Assembly: GCA_002269645.1 (NCBI GenBank)
Contig: NIVC01001965.1
Location: 280,254 to 344,253 of the forward strand
From: Macrostomum lignano
Lineage: Eukaryota
Reading direction: 5' to 3'
Length of the DNA stretch: 64,000 nt
Part shown: positions 29,223 through 64,000 of the stretch, piece by piece
How the letters are laid out: every line of letters starts with the position of its first letter
Numbering within the stretch: the first letter of the stretch is position 1
Position numbers and translations under genes: made by a program
The notes under the pieces: generated by a model
What the model was told of the DNA's origin: nothing
Seen by the model: only the letters and a program-made list of their open reading frames with translations
Databases searched by the model: none

Positions 29223-30653
29223 ATGAACTATTTTAGCGGCACCGGGGGCGCTCCGCCGCTGCCCCAGCTGTTCTGTTATCCCGCTGCCTCCGCCCACGCA
29301 TCCACCACCGCAGCCTGTCTGATGGCCACCGACAATTCCAGCGACTTGCAAAACCGGCCGCCACGCCAGCTGGAGACGGCCCTCGGCGCATCTGGCGTCG
29401 CCGTCATTCTCCTGGCCGGCGCCGCCGCCAACGCCGTCGCCCTGGCGCTGACCCTCCGCCGCGGCGCCCAGTCGAAGTTGCACTCGATTTTTGTTGGCAA
29501 CCTGGCGCTGGCCGACCTGCTGGTCACGCTGCTCACCCCGGCCGCCTGGTATTTCTACGTCTGGCCGCCGGCCGCCGGCCACTCTCGGGCGGCCCGCTGG
29601 ACCGAGGCCGCCGTGCAGGCCGCCCAGTCAGCCTCCGTCTGCGCCGTAGTGGCCGTGACAATCGACAGAACCTGCCTGGTGTTCCGGCCGATCAAGTACC
29701 GCCTGAGCCATCGCCGGCTCACCCCGATGCTGCTGGCCGGCCTCGCCTGGGTGCTGTGCACCGCCGGCCAGGCGCCCAGACTCGGCCTGGGCCCGGACGG
29801 CCGTCGCCTCTTCCAGCGGCTGCACATTGTCGCCGAATTCGCCGCCGCCCTGTGCGCCTTGGCCGTCTGCAACTTCACCATCTGCCGGCAGATTGAACGG
29901 AGCAGGAAGCTCAAGTTCCTGCGCAGGCACTCGGGCTACTCAACCGACTGCGGCGGCGGCGGCGGCGGCGGCGGCGGCTCCACCAGGCAGCTGCTAACCA
30001 CAGGAAAGCCGTGCGGCCCCGCCGCCAGGAAGTGCTCCGTCCCCGTCAATGTCGGACAGACAGCCGCCGCCGCTGCCGCCTCCGCCGGCGCCGCCAAACT
30101 CCTGGAGAGGCCGCAGCGGAGGAACACCCTCTGCGATTTGGGCGTTGTTGGCTGCACCGGAGGCGCCGGCCCGGTCGGCGGAACCGCGACTCCTTTGCAC
30201 CGCGGCGACACCCGCCTGAGCCTGCAGTCCATGCAGCGACTGTCTCTGGACGCCAATTCGCGTCGCTACGCTCGCCAGCGCGACTCCGAGGAGGTGATCA
30301 ACGAGATCCTGGCCAAGCAGCACCGCCGGGCGCTGCGGACCCTCGTCCTGCTGGTGCTGCTCTTCGTCGTCTGCCGGGCGCCGCGGGCGGCGCTTTCCGG
30401 CGCCGAGTGGCTCGGTCTGCTGCCAGCGGGGCTGTTCAGGCCCTGCAGCTTCTACCTGGAGCTGCTGGTGCACCTCAATAGCGTCCTGGACCCATTCGCC
30501 TACGTGTTCTGCGGCAACCGGCTGTGCCATCGGCGAACTCGGGCCGGATTTGAAGCGGCCGGAGGTCGCCTGCGAGCCTGCTGCTGCCGCTGCTGCCGCG
30601 GTGGCTGCGTCGGCGGGGACGAGGCCGATGCAGGATCGCGGTTCGACTTCTGA
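29223..30653 (+). CDS. Orphan rhodopsin-like (class A) GPCR, single coding exon, 476 aa
   Basis: Seven hydrophobic segments. TM2 NLALADLL, TM3 TIDRT, TM4 W, TM6 FVVCRAP, TM7 LNSVLDPFAY, then a Cys-rich tail (CCCRCC). Long Gly/Ala-rich third intracellular loop and GC3-rich codons. Confidence 0.9.
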   Translation: MNYFSGTGGAPPLPQLFCYPAASAHASTTAACLMATDNSSDLQNRPPRQLETALGASGVAVILLAGAAANAVALALTLRRGAQSKLHSIFVGNLALADLLVTLLTPAAWYFYVWPPAAGHSRAARWTEAAVQAAQSASVCAVVAVTIDRTCLVFRPIKYRLSHRRLTPMLLAGLAWVLCTAGQAPRLGLGPDGRRLFQRLHIVAEFAAALCALAVCNFTICRQIERSRKLKFLRRHSGYSTDCGGGGGGGGGSTRQLLTTGKPCGPAARKCSVPVNVGQTAAAAAASAGAAKLLERPQRRNTLCDLGVVGCTGGAGPVGGTATPLHRGDTRLSLQSMQRLSLDANSRRYARQRDSEEVINEILAKQHRRALRTLVLLVLLFVVCRAPRAALSGAEWLGLLPAGLFRPCSFYLELLVHLNSVLDPFAYVFCGNRLCHRRTRAGFEAAGGRLRACCCRCCRGGCVGGDEADAGSRFDF

Positions 30654-46634: not shown

Positions 46635-49185
46635 TTAAAAGTGTAGATAGATCTGGGACATTTGCAGCGGCTCCCACTGGCCCGTGGCGCCGAACCAGCC
46701 CATGTACTGGATGTCGCCAATATCGCCATTACGATCGAAAATGCCATTGGGATTGGCCTCGCTGCAGTTGTCTCCGGTGCCGAACCACCAGCCGCTGTTG
46801 CCGTAAGCCTGCGAGCAGGCCTGGCCTGGCGAGCCCACTGGAAAATCGAAGGTGGCGAACTCGGCACCTCGGCTGGCCAGCATTGAGTCTCCGAAATTGA
46901 CGGAGCCCTTTTGGTACTTGGAGTAGTTCATGGCGTACCCTTCAGTTGGGCCCTTCACGGTGAAGTCGAGGTACTTGCATTTGTAATATTTTCCGTCAAT
47001 ACCGCTCTGAACGGACATCGTCACGCTCACATTTCCACTTGTCAGCAGATGGAGTCTGTCCAGCCCTGCGGTGCGGCGATCGGCCATGCTGAATTGCTGC
47101 TACTGAGTACCCGATACCCGATACCCGATACCCGATACCCGATACCCGATACCCTGCACTCGATACCCGATACCCGATACCCGATACCCGATACCCGATA
47201 CCCGATACCCTGCACTCGATACCCGATACCCGATACCCGATACCCGATACCTAAAACGCGGTACCCGATACCCAATACTCTGTACCCGATACCCGATACA
47301 CTGTACTCGATACCCGATACCTAAAACCCGATACCCAATACCCTTTATTCGATACTCAATACCCAATACCCAACACCCGATACCTAAAACCCGATACCGG
47401 CGATACCCAACACCCGATACCAAAAACCCGATACCCAATACTTTTTACTCGATACTTGATACCCGGCCGATACCCTGTATCCGATACCCTGTACCGGATA
47501 CCCTGTACCCGATTCCCTGTACCCGATTCCCGATGCCCAATACCCGATACCTGATAACCGGTACCCAACATCCAAATTTATCCATTTAAGGCAGTTAAAG
47601 CATGCTGTTGGACGCAATAAATGTGGTTCATTGGTCTGTGATGAAGCTTCTTACATTGCTTGCGATGTAACTACAAATACTTTGAAAATCTATACAGACA
47701 ATTTCAAATCTCGAGGCAATAAGAAGAGAAGAGCAATTCCTCGTGACAACTCTCACCTAGCCAGAAATTCGTTTTGTCGCCGAATCCATTGACGTAGTCA
47801 GACCAGCTACGCTCGAAGCTCACGGCGCTATTATAGCGTTTCTGCACCAAGCACTTGGTCGAATTCGTGGGCTCGGATCCTGAGAAAATAGATTTTTAAA
47901 TCATAGATGGAAACAGAATAAAGCACACGGATGACCCGCTTCAATAGTGAGTGGCACTAAATTCATTTGGCCGTCTGCTAGTGTTTTTCGGAGAAATTTG
48001 CGCACTTTTCCAAGGAACATTTGGGCCCGGCCATAGACTACAGAAACCTATTTATTCCTCACTGGGACCCGGGCCATAGACTACAGAAACCTATTTATTC
48101 CCCACTGGGACCCGGGCCATAGACTACAGAAACCTATTTATTCCCCACTGGGACTCGGGCCATAGACTACAGAAACCTATTTATTCCCCACTTGGACCCG
48201 GGCCATAGACTACAGAAACCTATTTATTTGGAGTTGTATTTCGACGTCCTGCTGCTTCAGCCATTCACGAGTTCAAAGTATAAATGTACAAGTGTAAACA
48301 ATTTTACCAAATTTTCGGTACAAGGTGGAATTCTCCGGTAGGTAGTTGAAGCAGCCATCCCGGCTAGTTGACATCTCGCACTCCGATGTGGAGTCGTTGA
48401 ATCGAAACGAGCGGCAGGTCGGACTGGCCAGGCATTGCAACACGCAGTCGGACTTTGAGACGGTGATGGAAGAGCGGGAGTCCACGCAGGCGCAGGTTGT
48501 CTGCGGCACAGCTTCGAAATCGGCCGAGGCTGCGGAAAAGTGAGCGTAGTTTAAATATGCGAATTCGAAGTCGTTAAGCGTGGAAACGACGGAAAGGCCC
48601 ACCAATGCTGCTTTACCACAAAAAGTCGATGCCTTTCTTAAGAAACAGAGAAATTCCTAAAGGTAGTTGAAGCAAATTTTAGTTTTCAATAAAATTTCAA
48701 AATTCAAAGTGGCGAATTTCGGGTAATTTTTTGTTTTAATTTTCTGCTTCGGGGGTTCAATTCTCGACTCACTCAGAACAATTTGTGTCACTGAGCAAGC
48801 CAAGTAACTCTGCACATTCTTCAGTTCACCCCAAGTGCCATGGACAATAAAAGTTCATCAAGCTATTTTTCATCGAATGCTACCTGAGACTGATAAGCAA
48901 GCAAAGTTGTGACGAAATTTTAGCTGAGCCCGTCTCTGTAGTGTGTCTTTGTCTAGACGGATTTTATAGATTTCTCGACTCAGCTTGTCTATGGCCAAAC
49001 CACATTCACATAACGCACAAAACGCAAAGCCTTGCGAAATTCGTTCAGAAACACGCAAGTGCGCGTATTCTAAGCGTTGCCGTTCTACAATCGTTCTTTT
49101 TTAGCTATTTTTATGACAAATGAAGACTTCTCAACTTACCAGAGATGCAGTGGATGAGCAGCAGAGCAGAGAATAGGGCCAGCAT
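46635..49185 (-). CDS. Secreted PAN/apple plus fibrinogen C-terminal domain (FReD) protein, 4 exons, 299 aa
   Basis: Exons 49185-49140 (signal MLALFSALLLIHCIS), 48607-48308 (SKSDCVLQCLASPTCRSFRFNDSTSECEM), 47879-47757 (LVQKRYNSAVSFERSWSDYVNGFGDKTNFWLG) and 47065-46635 (LDRLHLLT...GWWFG...CSEANPNG) sum to 900 nt. All introns are phase 1 GT-AG. Confidence 0.9.
47106..47570. repeat. 7-bp repeat (CCCGATA), FReD gene intron 3
   Basis: Direct inspection. Confidence 0.95.
48025..48230. repeat. 43-bp tandem repeat, about 4.5 copies, FReD gene intron 2
   Basis: CCATAGACTACAGAAACCTATTTATTCCCCACTGGGACCCGGG. Confidence 0.95.
48850..49002 (+). repeat. Dispersed repeat, copy B (in intron 1 of the FReD gene)
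   Basis: Same collinear blocks as 22845-22975, with an insertion of about 20 nt. Confidence 0.7.
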
Positions 49186-49992: not shown

Positions 49993-51014
49993 ATAAGAAA
50001 AACAGAGGCCGGGTTAATTATATTTGCATCAGCACGGAGGCGCGCAGTCCTGCGACCGGGTAGCAAAGCTGAGCTCCAGGCAAAAAAGCATAGGGTATAT
50101 TGCCTGCTATTTTTCGGTTGTAATTTATTTAACTTAATTCTTTAGACATACAGTATGCATACACGCTCAGTTACTAATAGTAGCAGTAGTAGTGTATTTC
50201 TCACTCAGTAAGCAGGCATTTTCAGAAAAATCGCGGCTAGTGACACAAAGATGAAATTTGCAATTAAAACAATTATAAGAATTTCAGCTTTTTTCAACGC
50301 CATGATATGAGGGTCTGTATTGAATCAATAGAGTAACTGTTAAATTAGGCAGCAATTTACAAGCAGCATAGATCAGCGGTCGGGCTGCATGACTAAAAAA
50401 GTCACACTGCTTATAGTGCCGTCATACACTACTGGCAGCCTATGTTTAGCATTTATTATTACTACATAGATCAGAACGGTAGCGACGAATTAGAAGATCA
50501 CTTAAATAAGCTTTTCGTTTTATATGACTTAAAAATCACCTTTAGAATAAATTTAGCACCTTGTAATGAGTGTACAGTAATGGAAATGTTAAATAATAAT
50601 AAAAATTGTTTTAACTTTTAACAATCACAAAAATACAGTCGAAATAAAACTTAAATCGATTCAACAAAAGGCCGTTCCGTTTTCAATTAAATTAAAAGCA
50701 TGCAAAAATGGCTGCAGTAAATATTGGGCAAAAATTTCTAACCAAGCACGCAAAAAGCTTTTCTAGCTCATATTCAGCGGGCAGCATGTTCTTACAAAAT
50801 CTTGATGGATACAAGCAGGTGCATCGAAGGTTTTTATCCAAAATTCTAAAAAAATAGCACTAAAAAGGCAATAGGGAAACAGAGGCACGCTTTGGGAAGA
50901 GGATGTTTGGCTAATGAATAAAACACTAGATAAAAGGGTTTGACGATGATATTTCTAATTTACAGTGTTGAACAACAGTCTTTAAATGGTTACGCCCTCC
51001 TCAATCCATATCCT

Positions 51015-51360
51015 TACCCACTAGCCGCGCTGCGACACCCACCTCACTCCATTTTCTACACCCACTAGCCGCGCTGCGACACCCACCTCACTCCATTTCC
51101 TACACCCACTAGCCGCGCTGCGACACCCACCTCACTCCATTTCCTTATCCAGTAGCCGCGTTGCGACACCCACCTCACTCCTTTTCCTACACCCACTAGC
51201 CGCGCTGCGACACCCACCTCACTCCATTTCCTTATCCAGTAGCCGCGTTGCGACACCCACCTCACTCCTTTTCCTACACCCACTAGCCGCGCTGCGACAC
51301 CCACCTCACTCCATTTCCTTATCCAGTAGCCGCGTTGCGACACCCACCTCACTCCATTTG
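51015..51360. repeat. 44-bp minisatellite, family X, array 1
   Basis: CCCACTAGCCGCGCTGCGACACCCACCTCACTCCATTTCCTACA. Confidence 0.95.
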
Positions 51361-51644: not shown

Positions 51645-54600
51645 CTAGATTTCGCTCTCGTGCTTCGGAGGCGATTTCCTGGCATCGATGGTGGACATGC
51701 TGAAATCGTTCACATTCTCGTCCATGATTTTGTCTTTTCGGCTTAGGCCGGTCTGCTCGAAGATAATGTCATTTAGAATCTGGAAAAAATGAGTTACAGT
51801 GGATGAGTTTCATTAGAAGTGGAACTAATAAATTAGCTTTCTCAAATCCTTTAAAAAAATCTACCATTCATAGTCATTTAACTAAGTTCATGTAGGTCCC
51901 CTTCTAGACATAGCTCGTAGAAAGACCAATACAAAAGCTATTCATATTGCCTTGGATTCTTACCAATCAGCAATGATTTGATTAAATAAAGACAACAGTC
52001 TAGCAGACATAAAAAGCTTTGCCGCGCAGCGACGCCTCCCTCACTCCATTTTCTAACCCACTAGCCGCGCCGCGACACCCACCTCACTCCATTTCCTACA
52101 CCTACTAGCCGCGCTGCGACACCCACCTCACTCCATTTCCTACACCCACTAGCCGCGCTGCGACACCCACCTCACTCCATTTTTTAACCCACTAGCCGCG
52201 CTGCAATACCCACCTCACTCCATTTTCCAACCCACTAGCCGTGCGGAGACGCTCCACTTTTCTCACCCTCGTCGAGCCACAATCAAGACAGATAAAGAAT
52301 CCTTAGTCTTGGAGCGAATCGTGGTGTATTGTGGTGTTATAAAGGATAAGAACACATTAAAGAATATTTTGTACTAATCTTAAGATATCTAGAAATTTAT
52401 TAAGGTCAGTCTGTTAGGCTATTCAATCAACAATGAACAGCCTGAAGCCCTGGATTGACCCGCTTGTGAAGGAGGGGTTGAACACGGTTGCCCCACGTAT
52501 CCGCGCATGAAATCTTACATCGTCCTCTTCGCCGCCCTCCTCGTAGATGGCCGGATTGCGCCGGCCTGTGCGAGTCTCCTTGCGGGTCAGCTTGGATGCG
52601 CCAGACTTGATCTGCCGAATAGGAGATTTGCGATGAGTTGAAGCCAATTTAAAAAGCTTAATTTCAAGTAAGTTTCAAGGCTCCTTTGTCACCTGGGGTC
52701 TGGGCCACCTGATGGATGACTCTTATCACCTGGGCCATTTGAAGGCGTTTATCATCACCTGGGCCATTTGGGTCTTATCACCTGCGCCATTTAGAAGGCG
52801 GCTTCTATCACCTGAACCCTTAACCGGACTCACTCACGTTTACAGTATCTTACTGCACTCACCGACTTCTCCAAATGCTCAGACGAGGCGGCGTCGCCTT
52901 CCGGCACTGCCGGGCCGCGCGTCTCAATCACCTTGCTGGTGATCACCTGGCGGGTCTTCTTGCTGCGCACAATCTTCTTCGTGACAGTGTTGCCGTGCTC
53001 GTCAACGTACGTCACTATTTCCTCCTCGGGCTCGCCGACTTGCTCGCTCTGCGATAGGATGGCAGTGGATTGCTAATCTAGCCAATACATGGGTGCAGGA
53101 ATAGAATGGATTGCTAATCTAGTCAACATGGACGAACCGATAGACAGGTTTCTAGCCAATATGGATAAAAAAACAGAATGAGTAAGATAATATGGAACAT
53201 ATGCGCCACTACATAACCAGTGACATGCATTTTATCGAATCTCCATTTAGAAAAGGATATTGCTATTTGGTTTACAGCATAATGCACTGGTGTAAAAAAC
53301 TTAATGCTTGGTCAAAGGCAGCATGAGAATATCTGAATTGATAGAACTGCCCATTTCTTTCAGTTAAAAATATTGATTAATACTGCCATTTCGTTAACTG
53401 TAATCTATATCCGTGTTGCAATGGCATACTTAAGTTTATGTTTATGTTTATGGTCATATATCAAATGCATGCAAAAACATGCATGTCATACTCGTGTAAA
53501 CATAAATATTAATAAGAATTTTCTGTTTTATACGTTTTTTTTAAAGAAGATTTCAAAATTCACAATCGCCTATTTACAGTAGTGACACTAATCTCCTCAT
53601 TCTGCTGCTTCCGAGTCGCATCCGCTTGTTGCTGCTGCCGCTGCGATTCAACTTTTTCAACGTCCTTTCGGCGAATATAAAGACAATCATAGTTGAACAA
53701 CAGAATAGCTAACTCAGAACTAACCTTAGTTTTCCTAAATGGAATCTAAATAGGGAAATTCAAATCAACTGACCTCGGTGCGACTCTCCAGAACCGTGAC
53801 CGACTGACCCTCCGGGCCGCCAGCGTTGCCCCTCGGCTTGGGGCTGGGAGCTCGGATCTGGGGCTTGTTCTCCCTGATCATGTCGTATTTCTGGTCAACC
53901 GCCGGTAGGTTGGAGGCCTGCGCAATAGTTGAAAAATTGAGCAAGAAGAGTGAGTAGTCAGCATATTTTAAAAATACAATAGAGTTGGATAAATTATTGT
54001 GCAGTTCAAAGAAAACAAAGAAAATGAAAAGCATAAAAGCATACGTGAAATGAAGTGCTAAAGAAATCATGTGTGTCATAGCCAGTCTTGAGGGGTAAGG
54101 AAATGGAGTGGGGTGGGTGTCTCAGCGAGGCTTGGGCGGAGTGAGGTGTTTGTTAAAGCGAGTCGAGGGGTAAGGAAATGGAGTGGGGTGGGTGTCTCAG
54201 CGAGGCTTGGGCGGAGTGAGGTGTTTGTTAAAGCGAGTCGAGGGGTAAGGAAATGGAGTGGGGTGGGTGTCTCAGCGAGGCTTGGGGGAGTGAGGTGTTT
54301 GTTAAAGCGAGTCGAGGGGTAAGGAAATGGAGTGGGGTGGGTGTCTCAGCGAGGCTTGGGGGAGTGAGGTGTTTGTTAAAGCGAGTCGAGGGGTAAGGAA
54401 ATGGAGTGGGGTGGGTGTCTCAGCGAGGCTTGGGGGAGTGAGGTGTTTGTTAAAGCGAGTCGAGGGTAAGGAAATGGAGTGGGGTGGGTGTCATAGCGAG
54501 CCTTGGAAGTGAGGAAGTTACCTTACATAAAGGTGGGTTGGTGTTTCAGCGAGACTTGAGTAGGGAAATGGTGTTGGATCAGGCTAGTTCACCACTAGTT

Positions 54601-57600
54601 AGCAGTGTGCGTGTTCGATTAATCAATCACTAAATCATTTTTTCAGTAGTTTTCTTTGAGCTTTCTTGATTTTCTTTACGAGCTAACCAGTGCCTGTTTG
54701 CATGTATACTGTTACTGTGTTTTTTCTATGTTTGCACCAACTAGTGGAAAAAATGTGGAAATAGTTTCATTACAAGCTAGCATAAGAGGCAACGATTGGC
54801 ATGCAGGGGGACAAAAGGCGGCGACAAGGATAAATATTTGATAAAATGGAAACCGATGTCGAGCTTGAAGCCAATAAGCTATAATTCCAGACGTACTCCG
54901 AGTAAAAAACAGTAAAGCAACCGAAAAGAAAGTGCAACAATTATTAAGCATGCAGTTCTGTGCTTAGATTTAGAAAGGAGTCTAAAAAGCAATTCGCGCC
55001 CCAAACCCGTTTGGCGAGGCTGTCCCGGATCGAGTTCGGTTCGGCGTATTTGAAGCCTCGTTTTTTTGGCTTGCGCTGGAAAATCGTGATGCCATTGAGT
55101 GAATTGTGAACTCGTCCCCAGCTTGAATCAAATTAATATTGAACTGCTTGCGAGATCAATGTTATGCTTCTGCTCTAATACGAGTTACGGGCGTAGTCAC
55201 GTTTTCTTTATTGGATCGCTTCTGTGAGGTGCATCTTTAGGGCGCAATCATTGGGGAGGGGGTGTCATCGATGAGGCTAGCACCAGAGCCAGAGGCGCCA
55301 GCAGCACCAGTGGCGCCAGCAGCACTAGGCGCGCCAGCAGCACCAGTAGCGCCAGCAGCACCAGGGGCGCCAGCACCTCCAGTGGCGCCAGCAGCACTAG
55401 GCGCGCCAGCAGCACCAGGGGCGCCACAGCTACTGTAAAGGGGGCGCCCCAGATTTTGTCAGCCTATTAAAAGAGGGGGTGCCGTCCCCTGCCCCTCTCT
55501 AGCTACGCCGGCCCCTGCTATGAGCGAGAATGCAAGAAAATGATGTTGCATCATCCGAACCTCCATAATGCCGGCCCTGCTACTCGGCTGGATGGAAGAC
55601 TCGGGCGCCAGGCAGACAGGCGTCCAGTCCGGACCAGGTGGATAACGGAACGGCCGCTGTCCAAGATTCACGTCCAACGTCTGGTCTCGCATGGCAACAG
55701 TTGGAAAGAAGGACTCGCGCTCGAGCATGTCCTGCTGCAGACTGTAGGCCGGTCCGAACGGCTGGCCGTTCTTAGCGAACTGCAGTTCGCCATTGTTGAA
55801 ATCGAAAAAGCAGCCAATGACGTCGCCTTTGGCGTAGGGCTCGCCGTAGGCTTCGATCTCGTCGTCGAATAGCTTCTTGCCCTGGTTGCCGGCCAGGCCG
55901 AAGCCTTCGTGGTCGGCGCCGTAGCCCCAGCCGTTGGCGTCGCGCCCGACGTCCAGCAAGCCGGACTCGGTGGTCCAGCCGACACGGCCGAGGCCGCCGG
56001 ACTCCAGGGGCTCCGCCTCCCAGTAGAACCGGCCGCCCTCGCTGCCTTTCAGGCCCTGGAAGTGTTGGTGTTGCAGCGACTTTCTTAGTCATCTATTCAA
56101 CTCGTTTACTGTTCTCTCTTAGTCTAGTTCAATCTGGTTCTCTCTCTCTCTTGCGCAGCTTTCTGATTGGCTCTTCAATTTTACCCCCTTTCTCAGTCCC
56201 GCACTCCACCCCCTCCTTTCTTATCTACGCCGAACCCGTAATTGATTTTAAACAAATAAACTTGTTTTGGGCCAAGTGCCTTAGGCACTGCCTGGGTTTT
56301 TAATCTTAGGCAGCCGCTACTTCCAATGGATTCTTCCACAGGCAGCCGCTATTTCCAGTGGATTCTTCCACAGGCAGCCGCTACTTCCAGTAGATTCTTC
56401 CACAGGCAGCCGCTACTTCCAATGGATTCTTCCACAGGCAGCCGCTACTTCCAATGGATTCTTCCACAGGCAGCCGCTACTTCCAGTGGATTCTTCCACA
56501 GGCAGCCGCTACTTCCAGTAGATTCTTCCACAGGCAGCCGCTACTCCCAAAGGATTCTTCCACAGACAGCCGCTACTTCCAGTGGATTCTTCCACAGGCA
56601 GCCGCTACTCTCAAAGGATACAGAAGCGCACACATTATCACAGGAAGCTGTACTCACCTTGTTGGCCCGAACGCCCTGCCAACCAAAGCCCAGCTGGCCC
56701 TGCGCAGACAGCTGGTCGGGTCCCAGTTGCAGGCCCGGCCCGCTGGTGTCGTGCGGGTTTAACCGCCAGCTGCGTGGATTTTCCGAAGTCTGGTTGGCGA
56801 GCGCCAGGCCCACCGGACGCCAGGCTCCGCCGGGCGGATAGGCGAGCGGTCTGGACGGATCGTCGCCAAAGTTCCAGTCAGCTGCGGCGCCGTCGCGAAG
56901 GCAGGCGGCCGGATAAACAGCCTGCGGGCCGCCGGAGGGACCGTCGGCACCACGGGACTTCCTGTTACCGCCAGCAGTGCCTGTCGGAGTAAAGAAGTCG
57001 GCTGGCAGCTGGTGCGCGGGCCCTAGCTCTTTGCCGTTGACCGCGTAGGTGACGGTGCCGTTGTCGAGGTCCAGGTAGGCACCGACTATGTCACCAGTCA
57101 TCAGCTGGACGCCGTATTGCTCGGAGACTCCATCTAGCATCTTCTGGGCGTGTCGGCCGGCCGGGTCGGTGCCAAAACCGCAGCCGTGGTTGTCCTGGGG
57201 GCGGGGGCGGGAGGAAGGCATTGGCTGATTTTCTATTATCCACTCTTCTCTACACCTCTCCTCTCGCTCCTATCTTCACCTCCCCGCTCCTATCTTCACC
57301 TCCCCGCTTCTATCTACACCTCCCCGCTTCTATCTACACCTCCCCGCTCCTATCTACACCTCCCCGCTCCTATCTACACCTCCCCGCTCCTATCTACACC
57401 TCCCCGCTCCTATCTACGCCTCCCCGCTCCTATCTACACCTCCCCGCTCCTATCTACACCTCCCCGCTCCTATCTACACCTCCCCGCTCCTATCTACACC
57501 TCCCCGCTCCTATCTACACCTCTCCGCTCCTATCTACACCTCCCCGCTCCTATCTACGAGTACATCCCTCCACCCCCTTGTAGTCCCCTAATTGGTTCCT

Positions 57601-60600
57601 CTCATTCCATCCTGGCTGCTCGTCTCACCCGTCCGAGGTTGAGATCGGCGTTGCCGTCCGCCCAGCCGACCCGTGCCTCCACCGGCTGGTCGGAGGGCCC
57701 GTCTCCCCGCACAGCGGTCTCGTAGTACCACTTGCCGCCAGCCGAGGCCCGGATGCCGCGGTCCGCCCGGCAGCCCTGCCAGTCGCGAACCCCGGCCGGG
57801 CAGGCGCCGGCGCAGCGCACGGGGTCCATGCCAGCGGCCAGGTAGGGGTCGGCGTCTGATGGATTCATCTGCCAGCGAATCGGTCTGTCAACGTCCAGCT
57901 CGGGCCGGCGGTCGTACTGCTCTCGTCGGTTCACCGGCGGCAGCAGCGGCGCGCCCATGCCGGCGCCCTGTCGGTTGGACATCGCGTAGGTGTCGTCGTT
58001 GGTCAAGCCCGAGGTGCCAGCGCCGCCGGCGCCCGTTCGAGCCTCACGGTTGTAGGCGTCGTCTGCGCGAATGATGATTTGAAAATGTTTAGATTTTGTT
58101 TTAACAATTTTAATAGAAACTGTTTGAGACAGTTAAACTAAAGTTCATTCATTAGTCCCGGATATCCGAACGCCGAACTCATTGACCTTTCTCTCTTAAA
58201 GATTTCGCACCGAGTTGACCTCGGCTGACCTTTTCGTTTTTCATTTGGTCCATTCAGTGGACCAAAGGACCAGCTATGTGACCTTAGTTAAACCCTTTGC
58301 GTCCCGCACTTGTGTGACCTCAATCGATCCCTGTTCTCCTCAGTCCCGCATTTGTGTGACCTCAATCGACCCCTGTTCTCCTCAGTCCCGCACTGTGTGA
58401 CCTCAATCGACCCCTGTTCTCCTCAGTCCCGCACTGTGTGACCTCAATCGACCCCTCCCTTACTAAACTGCTTGATATATTGCAGAGAATCACAGGCTGA
58501 AAGTGCATCAATCGGATTTGTAATAGCGTAGTCGCCTAAGCTGAAAATTATAAGCACGGCAGTCAAGCGTTTCTTACAAAGAATTCATCGCACAAATAGC
58601 AGGCTGTGGAATATTCGTATGCTTCTATCGTAAAAAATTTCAATGGGCATTAATAATTTATTCGTCTACTGAAGCAAGCAGATCTTAATATTATAGCAGT
58701 TAAATTCATGCCACATCAAATATTTAAATGACAATTAAAGTGACCAGTTTGTACTTTTATTTCTCCTTTTTTTAGAATCATAGACCTTTGAACAGAGCAT
58801 CTGGACTAAACAGTCCAGACGTTCGCACTACTGGCTTGAATTGTATTGCCCAAATTGATATTATGCCACACCGCCATTGCGAGTGTGTTAGACAGAAAAA
58901 AACATTAAAGTACCAGAGTTAGGCATTGGTTAGCAATATCAAAATATATTACAAATATATTCTACAAGTTTTTTAAATTAAAAACTATCAACAGACCGTC
59001 GAATCCTTCGTCTACTTTAGCTTTTGTAGGGCCGCCTGCAGTGAAATTAAAAGTGCATTGCAATAATAATAGTACAATTGTGTGGATGTGCCAGCGATTC
59101 ACTGGGCCTGCTGATCAAAGTTAATTAATAAATAGTGCTTTTAAAGTACGTAAAGAACTTTTTAAATCGATGCTTTTAACGTTACACATGCTATTTAGAA
59201 ATTACTTGTTAGTTACTAGAATTAGACTATTTGCATAGTGCTGATGGCTGACACCCTGGCTCTCTGACACCCTGGCTCTCTGACACCCTGGCTCTGACAC
59301 CCTGGCTCTGACACCCTGGCTCTTTGACACCCTGGCTCTGACACCCTGGCTCTGACACCCTGGCTCTGACACCCTGGCTCTCTGACACCCTGGCTCTGAC
59401 ACCCTGGCTCTGACACCCTGGCTCTTTGACACCCTGGCTCTGACACCCTGGCTCTGACACCCTGGCTCTGACACCCTGGCTCTCTGACACCCTGGCTCTC
59501 TGACACCCTGGCTCTCTGACACCCTGGCTCTCTGACACCCTGGCTCTCTGACACCCTGGCTCTGACACCCTGGCTCTTTGACACCCTGGCTCTGACACCC
59601 TGGCTCTGACACCCTGGCTCTTTGACACCCTGGCTCTGACACCCTGGCTCTGACACCCTGGCTCTTTGACACCCTGGCTCTTTGACACCCTGGCTCTGAC
59701 ACCCTGGCTCTGACACCCTGGCTCTCTGACACCCTGGCTCTCTGACACCCTGGCTCTGACACCCTGGCTCTTTGACACCCTGGCTCTGACACCCTGGCTC
59801 TGACACCCTGGCTCTGACACCCTGGCTCTGACACCCTGGCTCTGACACCCTGGCTCTTTGACACCCTGGCTCTGACACCCTGGCTCTGACACCCTGGCTC
59901 TGACACCCTGGCTCTTTGACACCCTGGCTCTGACACCCTGGCTCTTTGATACCCTGGCTCCCTGGCACCCTGGCTCTCTGACACTCTAGCTCTCTGACAC
60001 CCTGGCTCTCTGACACCCTGGCTCCCTGACACCCTGGCTCTCTGACACCCTGGCTCTCTGACACCCTGGCTCTGACACCCTGGCTCTGACACCCTGGCTC
60101 TCTGACACCCTGGCTCCCTGACACCCTGGCTCTCTGACACCCTGGCTCTGACACCCTGGCTCTTTGATACCCTGGCTCCCTGGCACCCTGGCTCTCTGAC
60201 ACTCTAGCTCTCTGACACCCTGGCTCTCTGATACCCTGGCTCCCTGGCACCCTGGCTCTCTGACACTCTAGCTCTCTGACACCCTGGCTCTCTGACACCC
60301 TGGCTCTTTGACACCCTGGCTCCCTGACACCCTGGCTCTCTGACACCCTGGCTCTCTGACACCCTGGCTCTCTGACACCCTGGCTCTCTGACACCCTGGC
60401 TCTTTGATACCCTGGCTCTCTGACACCCTGGCTCTCTGACACCCTGGCTCTCTGACACACTGGCTCTCTGACACCCTGGCTCTCTGACACCATGGCTCTC
60501 TGACACCCTGGCTCTCTGACACCCTGGCTCTCTGACACCCTGGCTCCCTGACACTCTGGCTCCCTGGCACCCTGGCTCTCTGACACCCTGGCTCTTTGAT

Positions 60601-62265
60601 ACCCTGGCTCCCTGGCACCCTGGCTCTGACACCCTGGCTCTGACACCCTGGCTCCCTGACACCCTGGCTCTCTGACACCCTGGCTCTCTGACACCCTGGC
60701 TCCCTGACACCCTGGCTCCCTGGCACCCTGGCTCTCTGACACTCTAGCTCTCTGACACCCCGGCTCTGATGCTCTGCCAATCCAACTCTAAAAGTAGCTG
60801 CCTTGTCAGAAAGATTACCATGTATTTGCTTGATGGTCAGCGTAGGAGCTGAAAATGCGACAGATATGAACATCGGCAAAAGCAGCAATGCGTACCCTTC
60901 TTCTTGAAGCTCTTGCGCATGTCAGGGGTAACTTGCACCTCCTGGTAGGCGCCCGACTGGTCGTTCTGCGAGTCCCGGATGCCGGTGCCCCACTTGCCCT
61001 TGAAGGTGCCGGGAATGTGCGGCTTCTGCGGTTTCTCGGCGGACTTCAATCTGAAGATCATTCAATTTTGCCAACATTATTTGCTACTTGCTTACTATAA
61101 GTAGGTTAAATGCGTTTTCAACTCGAAAACAAAAATACTATTAGAAGATTAAATCAATAATTGAATTGTTTCTAAAAAAAGAGTTATATAAATAGACCAG
61201 TAGGAACTTTTGTTCATGAGCACAATAAGCTAACCTGAAGAATCCGTGATGCTCAACCACAGCCCGCCAGAGTCGCTTAGCCAGCTTCGATGAGGCGCAC
61301 TTGAACTCAAACAGAGTCTCCGACTTGGGGTCGCGCTCGTTATCCCCGGTGCGAATTGACACCTTGAGCGTGCTGCCCTTGTAGGACACTTTGAGAATCT
61401 TCGGCCAGGAGAAGCGGTTAATCCGGAGGTTGTTGCGGTACACCAGAACGCCGCCGTGGTAAACTCCAAGGAGGACCTCCTCGCCAGAGGCGTCCTTAGA
61501 CTCGTGCAAATCGACGCCGTACATGGCGAGCTTCTTGGCGTTCCGCAGGAAGTGCAGGTCGGCCTCCTCCGGAGTCATGCGCTGGTGCGTGCGGTGCAGC
61601 TCGCTGACTCGCTCGGCCAGCTCGGCGTTGTTTCGGTACTCCTCCGGACAGAACGGGCAGTCCTGGGCGGCGAAGTTTAAACTAGGAAAATCAATTGCCA
61701 ACTCTTTCCATCTTGAGAGGGATAATACCGGATAAATGGGGATATTCTAGATCAGGGGTTGGCGAAGCCTCTCTATCCGGCCATTGGGTCCTCGGAAACT
61801 TCACGATAGCAATTCGGTCTGCCCAGGGTTTGTGTCTCTTCTCAGCTGTCTTCTCTCAAATCTCTGTCCCGCAGTCATCCGCTATGTTCTCTACCTGACC
61901 CCTGTTCTAGATCCTTATTGAGCCTTTGTTTATTGACATGTCGAGGTACTACATGAGCTGTAGCAATTCGATAAAAAGTCAATCAAGCGAGCCCTGACTT
62001 TCTCATCGTCAGCTCTGCGCTTACAGACTTACATTCAAGTACACCAGCGAGTTCATCTTCTCGTCCAACGGATCGAAATCGCCAACTTCAGACTGCAGCA
62101 CGTAGCTGCCCAGGATGATGTAGGTGATGAAACTGCAAGGCAGCAGCTCGGCCATGAGGTTCTGCCGAATCTGCAGCGCCATGTAGTAGCGGGTGAGATT
62201 CTCCCGCAGATTCTCCGGGTCGGGCGGGTAGAACTTCACCATGAACTCCAGCTTCCACTCGTTCT
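51645..62265 (-). CDS. Band 4.1/coracle-like FERM protein with two SPRY domains, 5' end not found in window; 11 exons and about 975 codons visible
   Basis: Exons 62265-62033, 61662-61235, 61050-60896, 58062-57629, 57194-56658, 56055-55561, 53917-53774, 53664-53578, 53048-52863, 52611-52519 and 51779-51645 sum to 2927 nt (2 plus 975 codons). All introns are GT-AG with consistent phases. Confidence 0.88.
52020..52250. repeat. 44-bp minisatellite, family X, array 2
   Basis: Same unit as 51015-51360. Confidence 0.95.
54085..54520. repeat. 75-bp minisatellite (inverted, dimeric derivative of family X)
   Basis: Period 75 (54090 and 54165). The reverse complement contains GCTGAGACACCCACCCCACTCCATTTCCTTAC. 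Confidence 0.92.
55600..56775 (-). CDS. SPRY domain 2 (DDX1-like), split by intron 56056-56657
   Basis: WRLNPHD, WQGVRANK|GL, GRFYWE, GRVGW, LDVGRDANGWGYG, GKK, YGEPYAKGDVIGCFFDF, FAKNGQPFGPAY, FFPTV, NLG, FRYPP. Domain boundaries are approximate. Confidence 0.9.
56308..56610. repeat. 32-bp minisatellite (CAGGCAGCCGCTACTTCCAGTGGATTCTTCCA)
   Basis: Lies in the intron that splits SPRY2. Confidence 0.96.
56790..57875 (-). CDS. SPRY domain 1 (DDX1-like), split by intron 57195-57628
   Basis: WQMNPSD, WQGCRADRG, GKWYYE, RVGW, LNLGR|DNHGCGFG, GDIVGAYLDLDNG, NGKELG, VYPA, NFG, YPP. Domain boundaries are approximate. Confidence 0.88.
57255..57560. repeat. 20-bp minisatellite (TCCCCGCTCCTATCTACACC)
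   Basis: Lies in the intron that splits SPRY1. Confidence 0.96.
58305..58455. repeat. About 40-bp tandem repeat, 3-4 copies
   Basis: TGTGTGACCTCAATCGACCCCTGTTCTCCTCAGTCCCGCAC. Confidence 0.9.
59248..60770. repeat. 15/17-bp minisatellite (GACACCCTGGCTCT(CT))
   Basis: Direct inspection. Confidence 0.97.
61235..62265 (-). CDS. FERM domain lobes (two exons: 62265-62033 and 61662-61235)
   Basis: FMVKFYPPDP, TRYYMALQIRQ, LPCSF, LGSYVLQSEVGDFDP, MTPEEADLHFL, KKLAMYGVDLH, INRFSWPKILKVSYK and AKRLWRAVVEHHGFFRL are canonical protein 4.1 family FERM motifs. Confidence 0.95.
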
Positions 62266-62354
62266 CTGGCGGAAACAAATTTGAGAAAAAGAGATATCGA
62301 ATCAACTGGAATGCTTGATGACATAGTGTGGGTCTTAACTCGTGGGTCCTGCTG

Positions 62355-62785
62355 CTACCCTCCGTGATACTTCAGTGCCCCTGCAGCAATACCCTCCGTG
62401 ATAATTCAGTGCCCCTGCAGCAATACCCTCTGAGCTACTTCAGTGCCCCTGCAGCAATACCCTCTGAGCTACTTCAGTGCCCCTGCAGCAATACCCTCTG
62501 AGCTACTTCAGTGCCCCTGCAGCAATACCCTCTGAGCTACTTCAGTGCCCCTGCAGCAATACCCTCAGAGCTACTTCAGTGCCCCTGCAGCAATACCCTC
62601 TGAGCTACTTCAGTGCCCCTGCAGCAATACCCTCCGTGCTACTTCAGTGCCCCTGCAGCAATACCCTCCGTGCTACTTCAGTGCCCCTGCAGCAATACCC
62701 TCCGTGCTACTTCAGTGCCCCTGCAGCAATACCCTCCGTGCTACTTCAGTGCCCCTGCAGCAATACCCTCCGTGCTACTTCAGCC
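62355..62785. repeat. 34-bp minisatellite (CTTCAGTGCCCCTGCAGCAATACCCTCTGAGCTA)
   Basis: Direct inspection. Confidence 0.97.
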
Positions 62786-63769
62786 ACCTTCAACTACCCC
62801 TCCAGTACGCAGTTAGGCTTGAAACAAAGTTGTCTAGTAAGCAACATGCCTCATTCGAATAAAGCCATCTATAGCATACGAAGGTCGCAGATGAAACATA
62901 TATAGCGGTGGAAATTGTCGAAAATAGACTTATAGAAATTCTAAACTGTTTGGTCAAAGATTTGCTTATAAGATTTGGCCAGGAGAAGAAGTGCCCTTAC
63001 CGACGCTTTAATTTAAAGCCCTTGCTTGTGTGTCTTATGTTCCATGCTTCAATTATAGGTTTCCTGACTTTTGTAGCGGTCTGACTAGCTGTTTCAGGCA
63101 ACTATTAGAGAATGTAAGCAAACCGCATGGCCTAGTGATCTCTTTACCAAAATCTTGCAGTAATGCTTAACTGAAATAAAAATTTGGGGCTTGTGATAGC
63201 AATTTACCGAAATTTCTTTTCCATGGCTGAAGCAATGATACCCATATTCAGAAAGTGGAAGCAGACAGCTTAAGGCTGACTGCAGCCAAACCAAAATTAT
63301 GAGATACAACAAGCAGCCTGAATATGTCTGCCAGCAGCCTCCGCCCAAGGCCTTAGTCACCACTTCGCGTACGACTTGTGGAAGGAACGCACACAAAGGG
63401 CGGTGGGGGGTAGACAGTGACTAAATACCGCCCCCCCACACACATCAAGCCTCTTCTCTCAGACACGGCTTCAGAATTTTTTTGTGCTGTGTGCCAGGCC
63501 GTTGACTAAAGCTGCTCCGACGGCTGCCGGGGCTCTGCTGGCCGCGGGTTTGTCACTAAACTGCGCAGAAGCTGACTCGAATAGTTTCTTATTTTGCATT
63601 TAGCTATTTAGCTCGTAGTAACCGTCACTTATTAGTTGAACAGTCATAATCAGCAATTAGAATGGCATTGTGGGAAAATAAATCTGCTTAATACAAAGAA
63701 AGAATCTGTTGATAACAGCCGTGAATAAAAGTGTGGTGAATGAGACACTAAGTGTTGCGTATTAAATAG

Positions 63770-64000
63770 TTGACATGATGAATGAACAGTTGACATGCGG
63801 AATGAACCGTTGATAATGATGAAGGAACTGCTGAAAATGATGAATGAACAGTTGACATGAGGAATGAACAGTTGACATGAGGAATGAACAGTTGACATGC
63901 GGAATGAACCGTTGATAATTATAATTGAACAGTTGATAATTATGAATGAACAGTTGATAATTATGAATGAACTGTTGGCAATGATGAATGAACTGTTGGC
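63770..64000. repeat. About 20-bp degenerate minisatellite (GTTGACATGAGGAATGAACA)
   Basis: Runs off the end of the window. Confidence 0.88.

What the first reader, a model, noticed from the sequence alone, without database searches (positions are those of the whole stretch)
55561..62265. FERM (protein 4.1/coracle-type) protein fused to two tandem DDX1-type SPRY domains
Seen: phase-consistent splicing joins canonical 4.1-family FERM exons, through a divergent FERM-adjacent exon (LKSAEKPQKPHIPGTFKGKW), to two complete SPRY domains. Known: 4.1/coracle proteins normally follow FERM with an FA region, a spacer and a C-terminal domain, and I know of no FERM-SPRY-SPRY protein. Both SPRY copies open with W-x-[ML]-N-P-x-D...W-x-G-x-R-A, matching the SPRY insert of the RNA helicase DDX1 as I recall it (WQMNPYD...WHGCRATKG), rather than TRIM, RanBP9 or SPSB types. 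No DEAD-box motifs are present. The introns split the two copies at different positions (LNLGR|DN versus RANK|GL), suggesting an old duplication. Inference: a membrane-cortex scaffold captured and duplicated a DDX1-like interaction module, possibly coupling junction or cortex proteins to DDX1 SPRY partners such as RNP or tRNA-ligase-complex components.
Basis: partly seen in the sequence, partly recalled or inferred. Interest (0 to 1): 0.85.

Follow-up and report, generated by a model that had tools for sequence, protein, structure and literature searches.

The report
Flatworm 4.1 protein with two SPRY domains
The window holds most of a real, transcribed flatworm gene in which a protein 4.1-type membrane anchor (FERM domain) carries two inserted copies of the SPRY binding module otherwise typical of the RNA helicase DDX1. 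This combination is seen only in flatworms, is already in databases as unnamed predicted proteins, and was not found in the paper library searched.

Summary
**Observation:** confirmed. The six GT-AG, phase-consistent exons at the stated coordinates encode FERM_M, FERM_C and two SPRY domains.

**Gene:**
- The window is 100% identical to Macrostomum lignano contig NIVC01001965.1.
- The gene is BOX15_Mlig026758g1: 1098 aa, 14 coding exons, 11 of them in the window (62265 down to 51645, minus strand).

**One gene, not two:** intron-less Logan contigs from a related Macrostomum, a trematode and a cestode each carry FERM and both SPRY domains in a single ORF.

**Distribution:** the architecture appears in at least 15 flatworm species. 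No non-flatworm was found among 1.84 billion representative proteins.

**SPRY type:**
- Both copies are DDX1-type (4xw3: E 7e-23 and 1e-29; model TM 0.90-0.93).
- They came from one capture and an old duplication.
- All regions are under purifying selection (dN/dS 0.10-0.22).

**4.1 relationship:** degenerate FA and C-terminal-domain remnants suggest the SPRY pair was inserted into a true 4.1 protein.

**Function:**
- A link to the tRNA-ligase complex is not supported, because the DDX1 SPRY is dispensable for that complex.
- The likely role is a cortical adaptor with an unknown SPRY ligand.

**Rating:** new variant of a known kind, moderate interest.

The parts
61235..62265 (-). Two exons (62265-62033, 61662-61235) encoding FERM lobes F2 and F3 (P0001 aa 140-360), 4.1/coracle type
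   Evidence: Pfam FERM_M 1.4e-20 and FERM_C 2.2e-22. The best non-flatworm hits are all protein 4.1/EPB41L/coracle, at 49-56% identity.
60896..61050 (-). Exon encoding a degenerate FERM-adjacent (FA-like) region, LKSAEKPQKPHIPGTFKGKW...
   Evidence: Splice sites and phase. hhalign of the flatworm post-FERM region against canonical FA gives prob 78%, E 1.8e-5 over 44 columns. Pfam FA is not detected.
58997..59035 (-).
   Evidence: tblastn of P0001 is 100% identical. AG/GT flanks are present. It is present in P0001 and P0002 and absent from paralog P0003. A 40-nt gap between the transcript blocks on either side (L001 1344 to 1384; L002 1323 to 1363) matches it.
56784..57889 (-). SPRY domain 1 (aa 483-706), split by the intron 57628-57195 after LNLGR. 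The exon holding its first half (58062-57629) also encodes the upstream low-complexity linker.
   Evidence: PDB phmmer: DDX1 SPRY 4xw3 at E 6.9e-23, next best RyR at 3.5e-11. Pfam SPRY matches in two stretches. AF2 model pLDDT 88.
55585..56783 (-). SPRY domain 2 (aa 707-905), split by the intron 56657-56056 after RANK. Exons are 57194-56658 (shared with SPRY1) and 56055-55561.
   Evidence: PDB phmmer: DDX1 SPRY 4xw3 at E 1.2e-29 over residues 20-204 of the chain. Foldseek top hit is 4xw3: E 2e-21, TM (target) 0.90-0.93, rmsd 1.4-1.5 A.
53774..53917 (-). Exon encoding the post-SPRY tail (ASNLPAVDQKYDMIRENK...), conserved VD(R/K) motif
   Evidence: tblastn and splice sites. Family alignment A1.
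52863..53048 (-). Exon encoding the conserved T/K-rich segment EEIVTYVDEHGNTVTKKIVRSKKTRQVITSKVIETRG (candidate proximal part of a degenerate 4.1 C-terminal domain)
   Evidence: Conserved across Macrostomum, trematodes, a monogenean and cestodes. Similarity to the 4.1 CTD here is by eye only; hhalign was not significant for this part.
51645..52611 (-). Last two coding exons (52611-52519, 51779-51645 including the stop). The motif EEDD|ILNDIIFEQTGLSRKD spans their junction and aligns with the 4.1 CTD motif IDHDxALAEAIxEATxMNPD.
   Evidence: Gene model is 100% identical to P0001. hhalign of flatworm tails against the canonical CTD gives prob 78%, E 1.8e-5 for all flatworms and prob 94%, E 9e-8 for neodermatans only. 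A targeted hmmsearch gives E 2e-5 to 4e-3 for four neodermatan members.

Best explanation
**What the locus is (shown).** It is the 3' four-fifths of a single M. lignano gene, BOX15_Mlig026758g1, encoding a 1098-aa member of the protein 4.1/coracle family found only in flatworms in the searches run here.

Domain order:
- 4.1-type FERM (F1-F3)
- degenerate FA-like segment
- low-complexity linker
- two tandem SPRY beta-sandwich domains of the DDX1 type
- tail carrying a degenerate remnant of the 4.1 C-terminal domain

**Other points shown here.**
- The exon structure.
- Co-transcription of the FERM and SPRY exons in related species.
- Conservation of the whole architecture from Macrostomorpha to trematodes, monogeneans and cestodes.
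- DDX1 as the closest SPRY family, by sequence and by fold.
- Purifying selection on every region.

**Inferred origin.** In an early flatworm (rhabditophoran or older) ancestor, the SPRY-coding part of DDX1 was captured into the variable central region of a 4.1 gene. It was duplicated in tandem before the lineages split.

**Inferred mechanism.** The protein is a membrane-cortex adaptor. The FERM domain docks on cytoplasmic tails of transmembrane or junctional proteins and on phosphoinositides, as in 4.1/coracle. The SPRY pair is predicted to form a defined two-domain unit and offers two protein-binding platforms. These recruit a ligand not yet identified, at the position where vertebrate 4.1 carries its spectrin-actin-binding region.
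For: **Gene model**
- GT-AG exons with matching phases.
- 11-exon translation identical to P0001 aa 141-1098.
- Window identical to NIVC01001965.1 over 13,001 nt.

**One transcript**
- Two Logan contigs of 3.5 kb (SRR28338163 and SRR28338164) each carry one uninterrupted 1088-aa ORF with FERM_N/M/C plus SPRY.
- They align to the window exon by exon, with breaks at the predicted splice sites.
- Logan contigs of 3975 and 4380 bp encode the 1105-aa trematode-cluster and 1144-aa cestode-cluster orthologues. Each aligns to P0001 in a single HSP spanning FERM to SPRY2.

**Conservation**
- Full-coverage orthologues or fragments occur in these genera: Calicophoron, Echinostoma, Dicrocoelium, Clonorchis, Paragonimus, Heterobilharzia, Schistosoma, Cichlidogyrus, Taenia, Mesocestoides, Schistocephalus, Spirometra, Sparganum and Dibothriocephalus.
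- M. lignano has at least three paralogues.
- In the exhaustive search of 1.84 billion representatives, every hit above the FERM-only score level is a flatworm.

**SPRY type**
- Sequence hits to 4xw3 at E 6.9e-23 and 1.2e-29, against 1e-11 or weaker for other solved SPRYs.
- With the SPRY1+2 profile, DDX1 scores 182-190 bits against 75-87 for hnRNP-U-like and KPC1.
- All 14 flatworm SPRY domains tested score highest against metazoan DDX1.
- AF2 model has pLDDT 88 and pTM 0.81. Its Foldseek top hit is 4xw3, with TM 0.90-0.93.

**Duplication**
- Flatworm S1+S2 are monophyletic in 78% of bootstraps. The S1 and S2 clades each get 63%.

**Selection**
- dN/dS is 0.12 (FERM), 0.22 (FA/linker), 0.14 (SPRY1), 0.14 (SPRY2) and 0.10 (tail).

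**4.1 membership**
- The nearest non-flatworm FERM hits are all 4.1 proteins carrying FA and CTD domains.
- FA-like and CTD-like remnants are found by hhalign.
Against: - No experiment or expression data for the M. lignano gene itself was available. The transcript evidence comes from relatives at about 80% nucleotide identity, 81-82% amino-acid identity.
- Pfam does not detect FA or CTD even at E<=1. The hhalign matches are short (25-44 columns) and were looked for after the resemblance was seen by eye.
- The NJ tree does not separate DDX1 from the hnRNP-U-like SPRY at the root (29% bootstrap). An hnRNP-U-like protein itself hits DDX1 at 1e-23.
- The ligand of the DDX1 SPRY is unknown (PMC4555926, PMC8668186), so the adaptor mechanism rests on analogy with 4.1 proteins and SPRY domains in general.
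- Absence outside flatworms rests on the top 150 of one search, plus word-indexed searches of uneven sensitivity.
Confidence: 0.75

Rival explanations
1. The FERM-SPRY fusion is a gene-prediction artefact. A 4.1-like gene and a separate SPRY gene lie head to tail and were merged by the reader and by automatic annotation.
For: - The intron between the FERM/FA exons and the first SPRY exon is 2.8 kb and filled with a 1.5-kb minisatellite.
- All named database entries are computational predictions.
- Some fragmented assemblies do split the gene into 'FERM' and 'SPRY' proteins, for example Schistocephalus and Dibothriocephalus.
Against: - Intron-less contigs from independent sequencing runs in three flatworm lineages carry FERM and both SPRYs in one ORF.
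- Splice phases match across the junction with or without the micro-exon.
- The same domain order is conserved at full coverage in distant species.
- The tail after the SPRYs carries 4.1-like features.
Confidence: 0.03
2. The SPRY pair does not derive from DDX1. It comes from another member of the DDX1/hnRNP-U-like SPRY group, or from an older common ancestor, and the resemblance to DDX1 only reflects slow evolution of the DDX1 domain.
For: - The split of DDX1 plus flatworm SPRYs from the hnRNP-U-like sequence has only 29% bootstrap support.
- hnRNP-U-like P0314 also has 4xw3 as its best solved match, at 1.3e-23.
- Global identity of SPRY2 to DDX1 is 36%, against 32% to the hnRNP-U-like sequence.
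Against: - Every flatworm SPRY scores about 1.7- to 9-fold higher in bits against metazoan DDX1 than against hnRNP-U-like, KPC1 or RanBPM-like SPRYs.
- Profile scores are 182-190 for DDX1 against 75-87 for the others.
- Alignments to 4xw3 start at the N-terminal strand W-x-x-N/S-P-x-D(R), which is shared with DDX1. The hnRNP-U-like sequences have D-x-Y-N-x-D-L there, and their alignment to 4xw3 starts later.
- Metazoan DDX1s score above the unnamed DDX1-like sequences from metagenomes.
Confidence: 0.12
3. One reading: the captured SPRY domains keep the partners of the DDX1 SPRY and so tether RNP or tRNA-ligase-complex components to the cell cortex or junctions.
For: - The domains are DDX1-type and under purifying selection.
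- DDX1 SPRY has a conserved basic surface patch proposed as an interaction site (PMC4555926).
Against: - DDX1 enters the tRNA ligase complex through its C-terminal helix only. Deleting the SPRY or the helicase domains does not affect recruitment (PMC13586351; PMC8668186).
- The molecular function of the DDX1 SPRY is stated to be unknown.
- After roughly 35% identity and a duplication, ligand specificity need not be retained.
- Whether the basic patch is conserved in the flatworm copies was not tested.
Confidence: 0.1
4. The gene is a lineage-specific paralogue that exists beside an ordinary flatworm 4.1/coracle gene, rather than being the flatworm 4.1 orthologue itself modified by insertion.
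For: - Pfam finds no FA or CTD in any family member.
- M. lignano has several paralogues of the family, so duplication is frequent.
- An S. mansoni vesicle proteome lists a 'Band 4.1-like protein' and a 'SPRY domain containing protein' as separate entries (PMC5818524). Their identity was not checked.
Against: - No M. lignano or other flatworm protein with a canonical FA+CTD architecture appeared among the top 120 hits, although 4.1 proteins of many other phyla did. All M. lignano hits were FERM-SPRY family members.
- Remnants of FA and of the CTD motif sit at the collinear positions.
Confidence: 0.3

Closest known systems
Protein 4.1 family (EPB41, EPB41L1-3; Drosophila Coracle)
   Same: - Three-lobed FERM domain, with 49-56% identity to 4.1 proteins of arthropods, molluscs, brachiopods, echinoderms and chordates.
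- A post-FERM segment collinear with the FA region.
- A variable central region.
- A C-terminal motif aligning with the most conserved part of the 4.1 CTD.
   Different: - Two SPRY domains occupy the central region.
- There is no spectrin-actin-binding domain.
- FA and CTD are too degenerate for Pfam.
- The family was found only in Platyhelminthes in the searches run here.
DDX1 (DEAD-box helicase 1) SPRY insertion domain, PDB 4xw3
   Same: - Same SPRY subtype, with 32-40% identity.
- Full-length alignment including the N-terminal W-x-M-N-P-x-D strand and the W-x-G-C-R-A motif.
- The model superposes on the crystal structure at TM 0.90-0.93, rmsd about 1.5 A.
   Different: - No RecA1 or RecA2 helicase core, and no DDX1 C-terminal helix.
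- The domain is present twice in tandem, within a FERM protein.
- SPRY1 of this copy has a 20-residue G/S-rich loop insertion of low model confidence.
- The deposited names 'DDX1, partial' for the Clonorchis and Cichlidogyrus family members are misnomers.
Other FERM proteins that gained a second functional module (PTPN3/4 FERM-PDZ-phosphatase, FARP FERM-DH-PH, MYLIP FERM-RING, MyTH4-FERM myosins). Named from general knowledge, not tested here.
   Same: The same evolutionary theme: a FERM membrane anchor combined by domain shuffling with another interaction or catalytic module.
   Different: None of these combines FERM with SPRY. Their FERM domains belong to other subfamilies, whereas this FERM is of the 4.1 proper type.
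hnRNP-U-like SPRY proteins and ryanodine receptors (multi-SPRY)
   Same: - hnRNP-U-like SPRYs are the next-nearest sequence relatives, at 75-87 bits with the family profile.
- RyRs are the next structural matches and also carry several SPRY domains.
   Different: - Much lower scores than DDX1.
- A different N-terminal strand motif in the hnRNP-U-like proteins.
- RyR matches have TM 0.04 by target and rmsd about 19 A for the tandem, so the two-domain arrangement is not RyR-like.

Membership tests
Protein 4.1 / coracle family | Three-lobed FERM domain of the 4.1 subtype at the N-terminus | tested here: met
   - Pfam FERM_N 9.7e-18, FERM_M 2.3e-20 and FERM_C 3.4e-22 in P0001.
- The window itself encodes FERM_M and FERM_C.
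- All best non-flatworm hits are 4.1/EPB41L/coracle proteins.
Protein 4.1 / coracle family | FERM-adjacent (FA) region directly after the FERM domain (Pfam PF08736) | tested here: inconclusive
   - No Pfam FA hit at E<=1.
- Profile-profile hhalign of the flatworm post-FERM region against canonical FA gives prob 78%, E 1.8e-5 over 44 columns.
Protein 4.1 / coracle family | Spectrin-actin-binding domain (PF04382; in the listed hits it appears only in vertebrate members) | tested here: not met
   - No Pfam hit in any family member.
- Among the listed hits, PF04382 appears only in vertebrate 4.1 proteins, so it does not define the invertebrate family.
Protein 4.1 / coracle family | C-terminal domain (4_1_CTD, PF05902) | tested here: inconclusive
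   - No Pfam hit.
- An HMM built here from 80 canonical CTDs hits four neodermatan members at E 2e-5 to 4e-3 in a 12-sequence target set.
- hhalign gives prob 94%, E 9e-8 (neodermatans) and prob 78%, E 1.8e-5 (all flatworms), over only the 25-26-column IDHDxALAEAI...NPD motif.
DDX1-type SPRY domain | Complete SPRY beta-sandwich fold superposable on DDX1 SPRY | tested here: met
   - Pfam SPRY matches twice.
- AF2 tandem model has pLDDT 88.1 and pTM 0.81.
- Foldseek top hit is 4xw3: E 2e-21, TM (target) 0.90-0.93, rmsd 1.4-1.5 A.
DDX1-type SPRY domain | Closer in sequence to DDX1 SPRY than to any other SPRY family | tested here: met
   - Supported. DDX1 is the top scorer for all 14 flatworm domains tested.
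DDX1-type SPRY domain | Conserved basic surface patch 1 of DDX1 SPRY (Kellner & Meinhart 2015) | not tested
   The patch residues are marked only in a figure of PMC4555926. Model coordinates could not be inspected with the tools at hand.
DDX1 helicase (orthologue) | SPRY inserted in RecA1 of a DEAD-box core, plus a C-terminal helix | tested here: not met
   - No DEAD (PF00270) or Helicase_C (PF00271) domain in the window product or in any family member. This includes the two entries named 'DDX1, partial'.
- The protein is therefore not a DDX1.

The most novel reading that the evidence does not exclude
This gene would be the only 4.1/coracle orthologue of flatworms. On that reading, a defining change of the phylum's cortical skeleton was the insertion of a duplicated DDX1 SPRY module into the central region of protein 4.1. 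The SPRY pair would still bind the unknown natural ligand class of the DDX1 SPRY. Flatworm 4.1 would then offer a helicase-free handle for identifying what the DDX1 SPRY domain recognises, and a flatworm-specific cortical complex shared by all parasitic flatworms.
Probability: 0.12. Interest if true: 0.6.

Novelty: new variant of a known kind. Interest (0 to 1): 0.4.

Why it matters
- **Domain shuffling.** This is a clean, datable example. A module otherwise typical of an RNA helicase was moved into a membrane-skeleton adaptor, duplicated, and kept under selection across free-living and parasitic flatworms.
- **Lineage marker.** It gives the 4.1 family a lineage-specific variant that could mark Platyhelminthes, or at least Rhabditophora.
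- **Annotation.** Misnamed 'DDX1, partial' entries can be corrected to FERM-SPRY proteins.
- **Experimental access.** It offers a helicase-free context for asking what a DDX1-type SPRY binds. M. lignano and planarians allow RNAi and transgenesis (own knowledge, not checked here), so localisation and interactors are testable.
- **Limits.** It does not open a long-standing question, and the proteins are already in public databases.

Tried and rejected
- **SPRY-only search.** The search for homologous proteins with the SPRY-SPRY segment alone returned only 4 hits and missed the known orthologues. The word index is a poor guide to distribution here. It was replaced by the exhaustive representative search and a profile search.
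- **First tail comparison.** hhalign of crude 200-aa tails against the 4.1 CTD was negative (prob 0.2%). It became positive only after the tails were trimmed and realigned around the conserved motif. The CTD claim is therefore kept as inconclusive.
- **Pfam at E<=1.** No FA or CTD was found.
- **First AF2 run.** With a 6-sequence alignment the model had pLDDT 58 and was discarded. The 18-sequence alignment gave pLDDT 88.
- **NJ phylogeny.** It supports one capture plus an old duplication, but it could not root the flatworm SPRYs against DDX1 or the hnRNP-U-like sequence.
- **Best PDB hit as a discriminator.** 'Best PDB hit is DDX1' was rejected as sufficient on its own, because an hnRNP-U-like protein gives the same best hit.
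- **Literature searches.** Searches for FERM+SPRY in flatworms found nothing relevant, apart from an unverified proteomics listing.
- **Rejected readings.** A pseudogene is ruled out by the intact ORF and dN/dS of 0.10-0.22. A chimeric prediction is ruled out by transcript contigs in three lineages. A true DDX1 fragment is ruled out by the absence of helicase domains.

Full report
**1. The observation**

Reading the minus strand of 55000-64000 and translating it in three frames shows GC-rich coding blocks separated by AT-rich, minisatellite-filled introns.

Their 760-aa product scores on Pfam as follows:
- FERM_M, 1.4e-20
- FERM_C, 2.2e-22
- SPRY, 3.3e-31, in two stretches
- no helicase domain

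So are the two different intron positions within the SPRY copies.

**2. The complete gene**

The spliced product matches protein P0001 (M. lignano BOX15_Mlig026758g1, 1098 aa) at 98% identity over its full length. Comparison with P0001 shows three things.
- A 39-nt in-frame micro-exon (59035-58997, GGPTKAKVDEGFD) lies inside the 2.8-kb intron.
- Four further 3' exons follow at 53917-53774, 53048-52863, 52611-52519 and 51779-51645, the last including the stop.
- The resulting 11-exon model translates to P0001 residues 141-1098 without a mismatch.

The window segment 51000-64000 is 100% identical over 13,001 nt to NIVC01001965.1 of assembly GCA_002269645.1. There the gene spans 18 kb. Its first three coding exons (aa 1-139, including FERM_N) lie 2.5-5.7 kb beyond the window end.

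**3. One gene or two**

Three lines of evidence show that the FERM-SPRY junction is real.
- Two independent Logan contigs (SRR28338163 and SRR28338164, 3.5 kb) each carry one uninterrupted 1088-aa ORF with FERM_N/M/C and SPRY. The protein is 81% identical to the window's.
- Aligned to the window, those contigs break exactly at the predicted splice sites. They include the micro-exon interval.
- Logan contigs of 3975 bp and 4380 bp encode the 1105-aa and 1144-aa orthologues, which cluster with Dicrocoelium and with diphyllobothriid cestodes. They leave no room for introns. Each aligns to P0001 in a single HSP from FERM to SPRY2.

Direct cDNA evidence from M. lignano itself was not available to me.

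**4. Distribution**

Proteins with FERM plus two SPRY domains were recovered from the following groups:
- M. lignano, with at least three paralogues
- trematodes: Calicophoron, Echinostoma, Dicrocoelium, Clonorchis, Paragonimus, Heterobilharzia, Schistosoma curassoni
- the monogenean Cichlidogyrus
- cestodes: Taenia, Mesocestoides, Schistocephalus, Spirometra, Sparganum, Dibothriocephalus

In the exhaustive HMMER scan of 1.84 billion representatives, every hit scoring above the FERM-only level (about 330 bits) is a flatworm. The first non-flatworm hit is an ordinary mollusc 4.1 protein matched on FERM alone.

Two deposited members are named 'DDX1, partial' but contain no helicase domain.

Full-text searches for FERM, SPRY and flatworm/Schistosoma/platyhelminth terms found no description of the family.

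**5. What kind of SPRY**

Against solved structures, the DDX1 SPRY (4xw3) is the best match for both copies.

| Copy | 4xw3 | Other solved SPRYs (RyR, RanBP9/10, Ash2L, SPSB, TRIM) |
|---|---|---|
| SPRY1 | 6.9e-23 | 1e-11 or weaker |
| SPRY2 | 1.2e-29 | 1e-11 or weaker |

This alone is not decisive, because an hnRNP-U-like protein also has 4xw3 as its best hit. Four further tests favour DDX1.
- **Family profile.** A profile of flatworm SPRY1+SPRY2 scores human and crustacean DDX1 at 190 and 182 bits. hnRNP-U-like and KPC1 SPRYs score 75-87 bits.
- **Single domains.** All 14 flatworm domains tested score highest against metazoan DDX1 (59-146 bits). The same domains score 8-64 bits against hnRNP-U-like, KPC1 and RanBPM-like SPRYs.
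- **N-terminal strand.** The strand W-x-x-N/S-P-x-D(R) is shared with DDX1. The hnRNP-U-like sequences have D-x-Y-N-x-D-L at that position.
- **Fold.** An AlphaFold2 model of the tandem has pLDDT 88.1 and pTM 0.81. Its top Foldseek hit is 4xw3, with TM 0.90-0.93 and rmsd 1.4-1.5 A.

A neighbour-joining tree gives these bootstrap values:
- flatworm SPRY1+SPRY2 monophyletic, 78%
- SPRY1 orthologue clade, 63%
- SPRY2 orthologue clade, 63%
- split of DDX1 plus flatworm SPRYs from the hnRNP-U-like sequence, 29%

The best reading is one capture of a DDX1-type SPRY, followed by tandem duplication before Macrostomorpha and Neodermata diverged. The DDX1 origin is supported by scores rather than by resolved phylogeny.

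**6. Relation to protein 4.1**

The FERM domain's nearest non-flatworm relatives are all 4.1/EPB41L/coracle proteins carrying FA and CTD domains.

Pfam finds neither FA nor CTD in the flatworm proteins. Two profile-profile comparisons nevertheless find remnants.
- The post-FERM segment aligns with the canonical FA region (prob 78%, E 1.8e-5, 44 columns).
- The extreme C-terminus aligns with the most conserved CTD motif, IDHDxALAEAIxEATxMNPD. The match is prob 94%, E 9e-8 for neodermatans and prob 78%, E 1.8e-5 for all flatworms. A targeted HMM search agrees.

These matches are short and were sought after the resemblance was noticed by eye, so I rate both as inconclusive. Their collinear positions suggest that the SPRY pair was inserted into the central variable region of a genuine 4.1 protein.

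Whether flatworms also keep a canonical 4.1 gene is open. None appeared among the M. lignano hits.

**7. Constraint**

Between the window gene and the related transcript, dN/dS by region is:

| Region | dN/dS |
|---|---|
| FERM | 0.12 |
| FA/linker | 0.22 |
| SPRY1 | 0.14 |
| SPRY2 | 0.14 |
| Tail | 0.10 |

All parts are maintained as coding sequence.

**8. Function**

Shown here: the architecture, its conservation, the selective constraint, and a predicted compact two-SPRY unit.

Inferred from what is established for 4.1/coracle FERM domains and for SPRY domains generally: a membrane-cortex adaptor. Its FERM binds transmembrane or junctional tails, and its SPRY pair recruits an unidentified protein ligand.

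- DDX1 is recruited to that complex solely by its C-terminal helix.
- Deleting the SPRY has no effect on recruitment (PMC13586351; PMC8668186).
- The function of the DDX1 SPRY is unknown beyond a conserved basic patch proposed as an interaction surface (PMC4555926).

**9. Verdict**

The gene is a lineage-specific variant of a known family. It is already in databases as uncharacterised or misnamed predictions, and I found no description of it in the library searched. Interest is moderate.

Noticed in passing
window 59248-60767, 57265-57557, 56308-56609, 62356-62783, and throughout (e.g. 13924-16694, 2178-3231): Many introns of the gene, and much of the window, are filled with long minisatellite arrays. 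Units are 4-105 bp and there are up to 174 copies. Tandem Repeats Finder reports 52 rows with score >=200. The 2.8-kb intron between the FA-like exon and the first SPRY exon holds a 16-bp unit repeated about 99 times.
   Followed up: partly
window 50995-51359, 52021-52241 and 54090-54506: One 44/74/87-bp repeat family (CCCACCTCACTCCATTTCC...GCCGCGCTGCGACA) forms three separate arrays. They lie just past the stop codon and in two 3' introns of the gene. The 54090-54506 array appears to be in the opposite orientation.
   Followed up: no
window 29223-30653 (+): A single-exon 476-aa ORF encodes a rhodopsin-family G-protein-coupled receptor (Pfam 7tm_1, 4.4e-18).
   Followed up: partly
window 11614-17215 (+): Exons of a likely REXO1-type gene. 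An ElonginA-binding-protein-1 domain (3.1e-20) lies at 13015-13908. A weak RNase_T exonuclease match (0.009, below the Pfam cut-off) lies at 16742-17215. A 2.8-kb array of a 21-bp unit (132 copies) separates the two.
   Followed up: partly
window 46635-47087 (-) and 48273-48605 (-): ORFs with a fibrinogen C-terminal domain (5.9e-12) and a PAN/Apple domain (2.2e-08). They may be exons of one or two secreted-protein genes just downstream of the FERM-SPRY gene.
   Followed up: partly
related proteins P0129 (Clonorchis sinensis GAA30691.2) and P0127 (Cichlidogyrus casuarinus KAL3319268.1): Both are deposited under the names 'ATP-dependent RNA helicase DDX1, partial' and 'DEAD box helicase 1, partial'. 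They contain FERM and two SPRY domains and no helicase domain, so the names are transferred from the SPRY similarity alone.
   Followed up: yes
literature, PMC5818524 (Schistosoma mansoni exosome-like vesicle proteome): The protein table lists 'SPRY domain containing protein' (XP_002576729.1, 10) next to 'Band 4.1-like protein' (CCD82557.1, 6). These could be split models of the schistosome orthologue, which would mean the protein is found in secreted vesicles. The sequences could not be retrieved to check.
   Followed up: no
M. lignano proteins P0003, P0007/P0073/P0121/P0132, P0122: M. lignano carries at least three diverged paralogues of the family, at 64% and about 52% identity to the window copy. 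Several UniProt entries for them are fragmentary or frameshifted. P0122, named 'SH2 domain-containing protein', is a garbled version of the P0003-type copy.
   Followed up: partly
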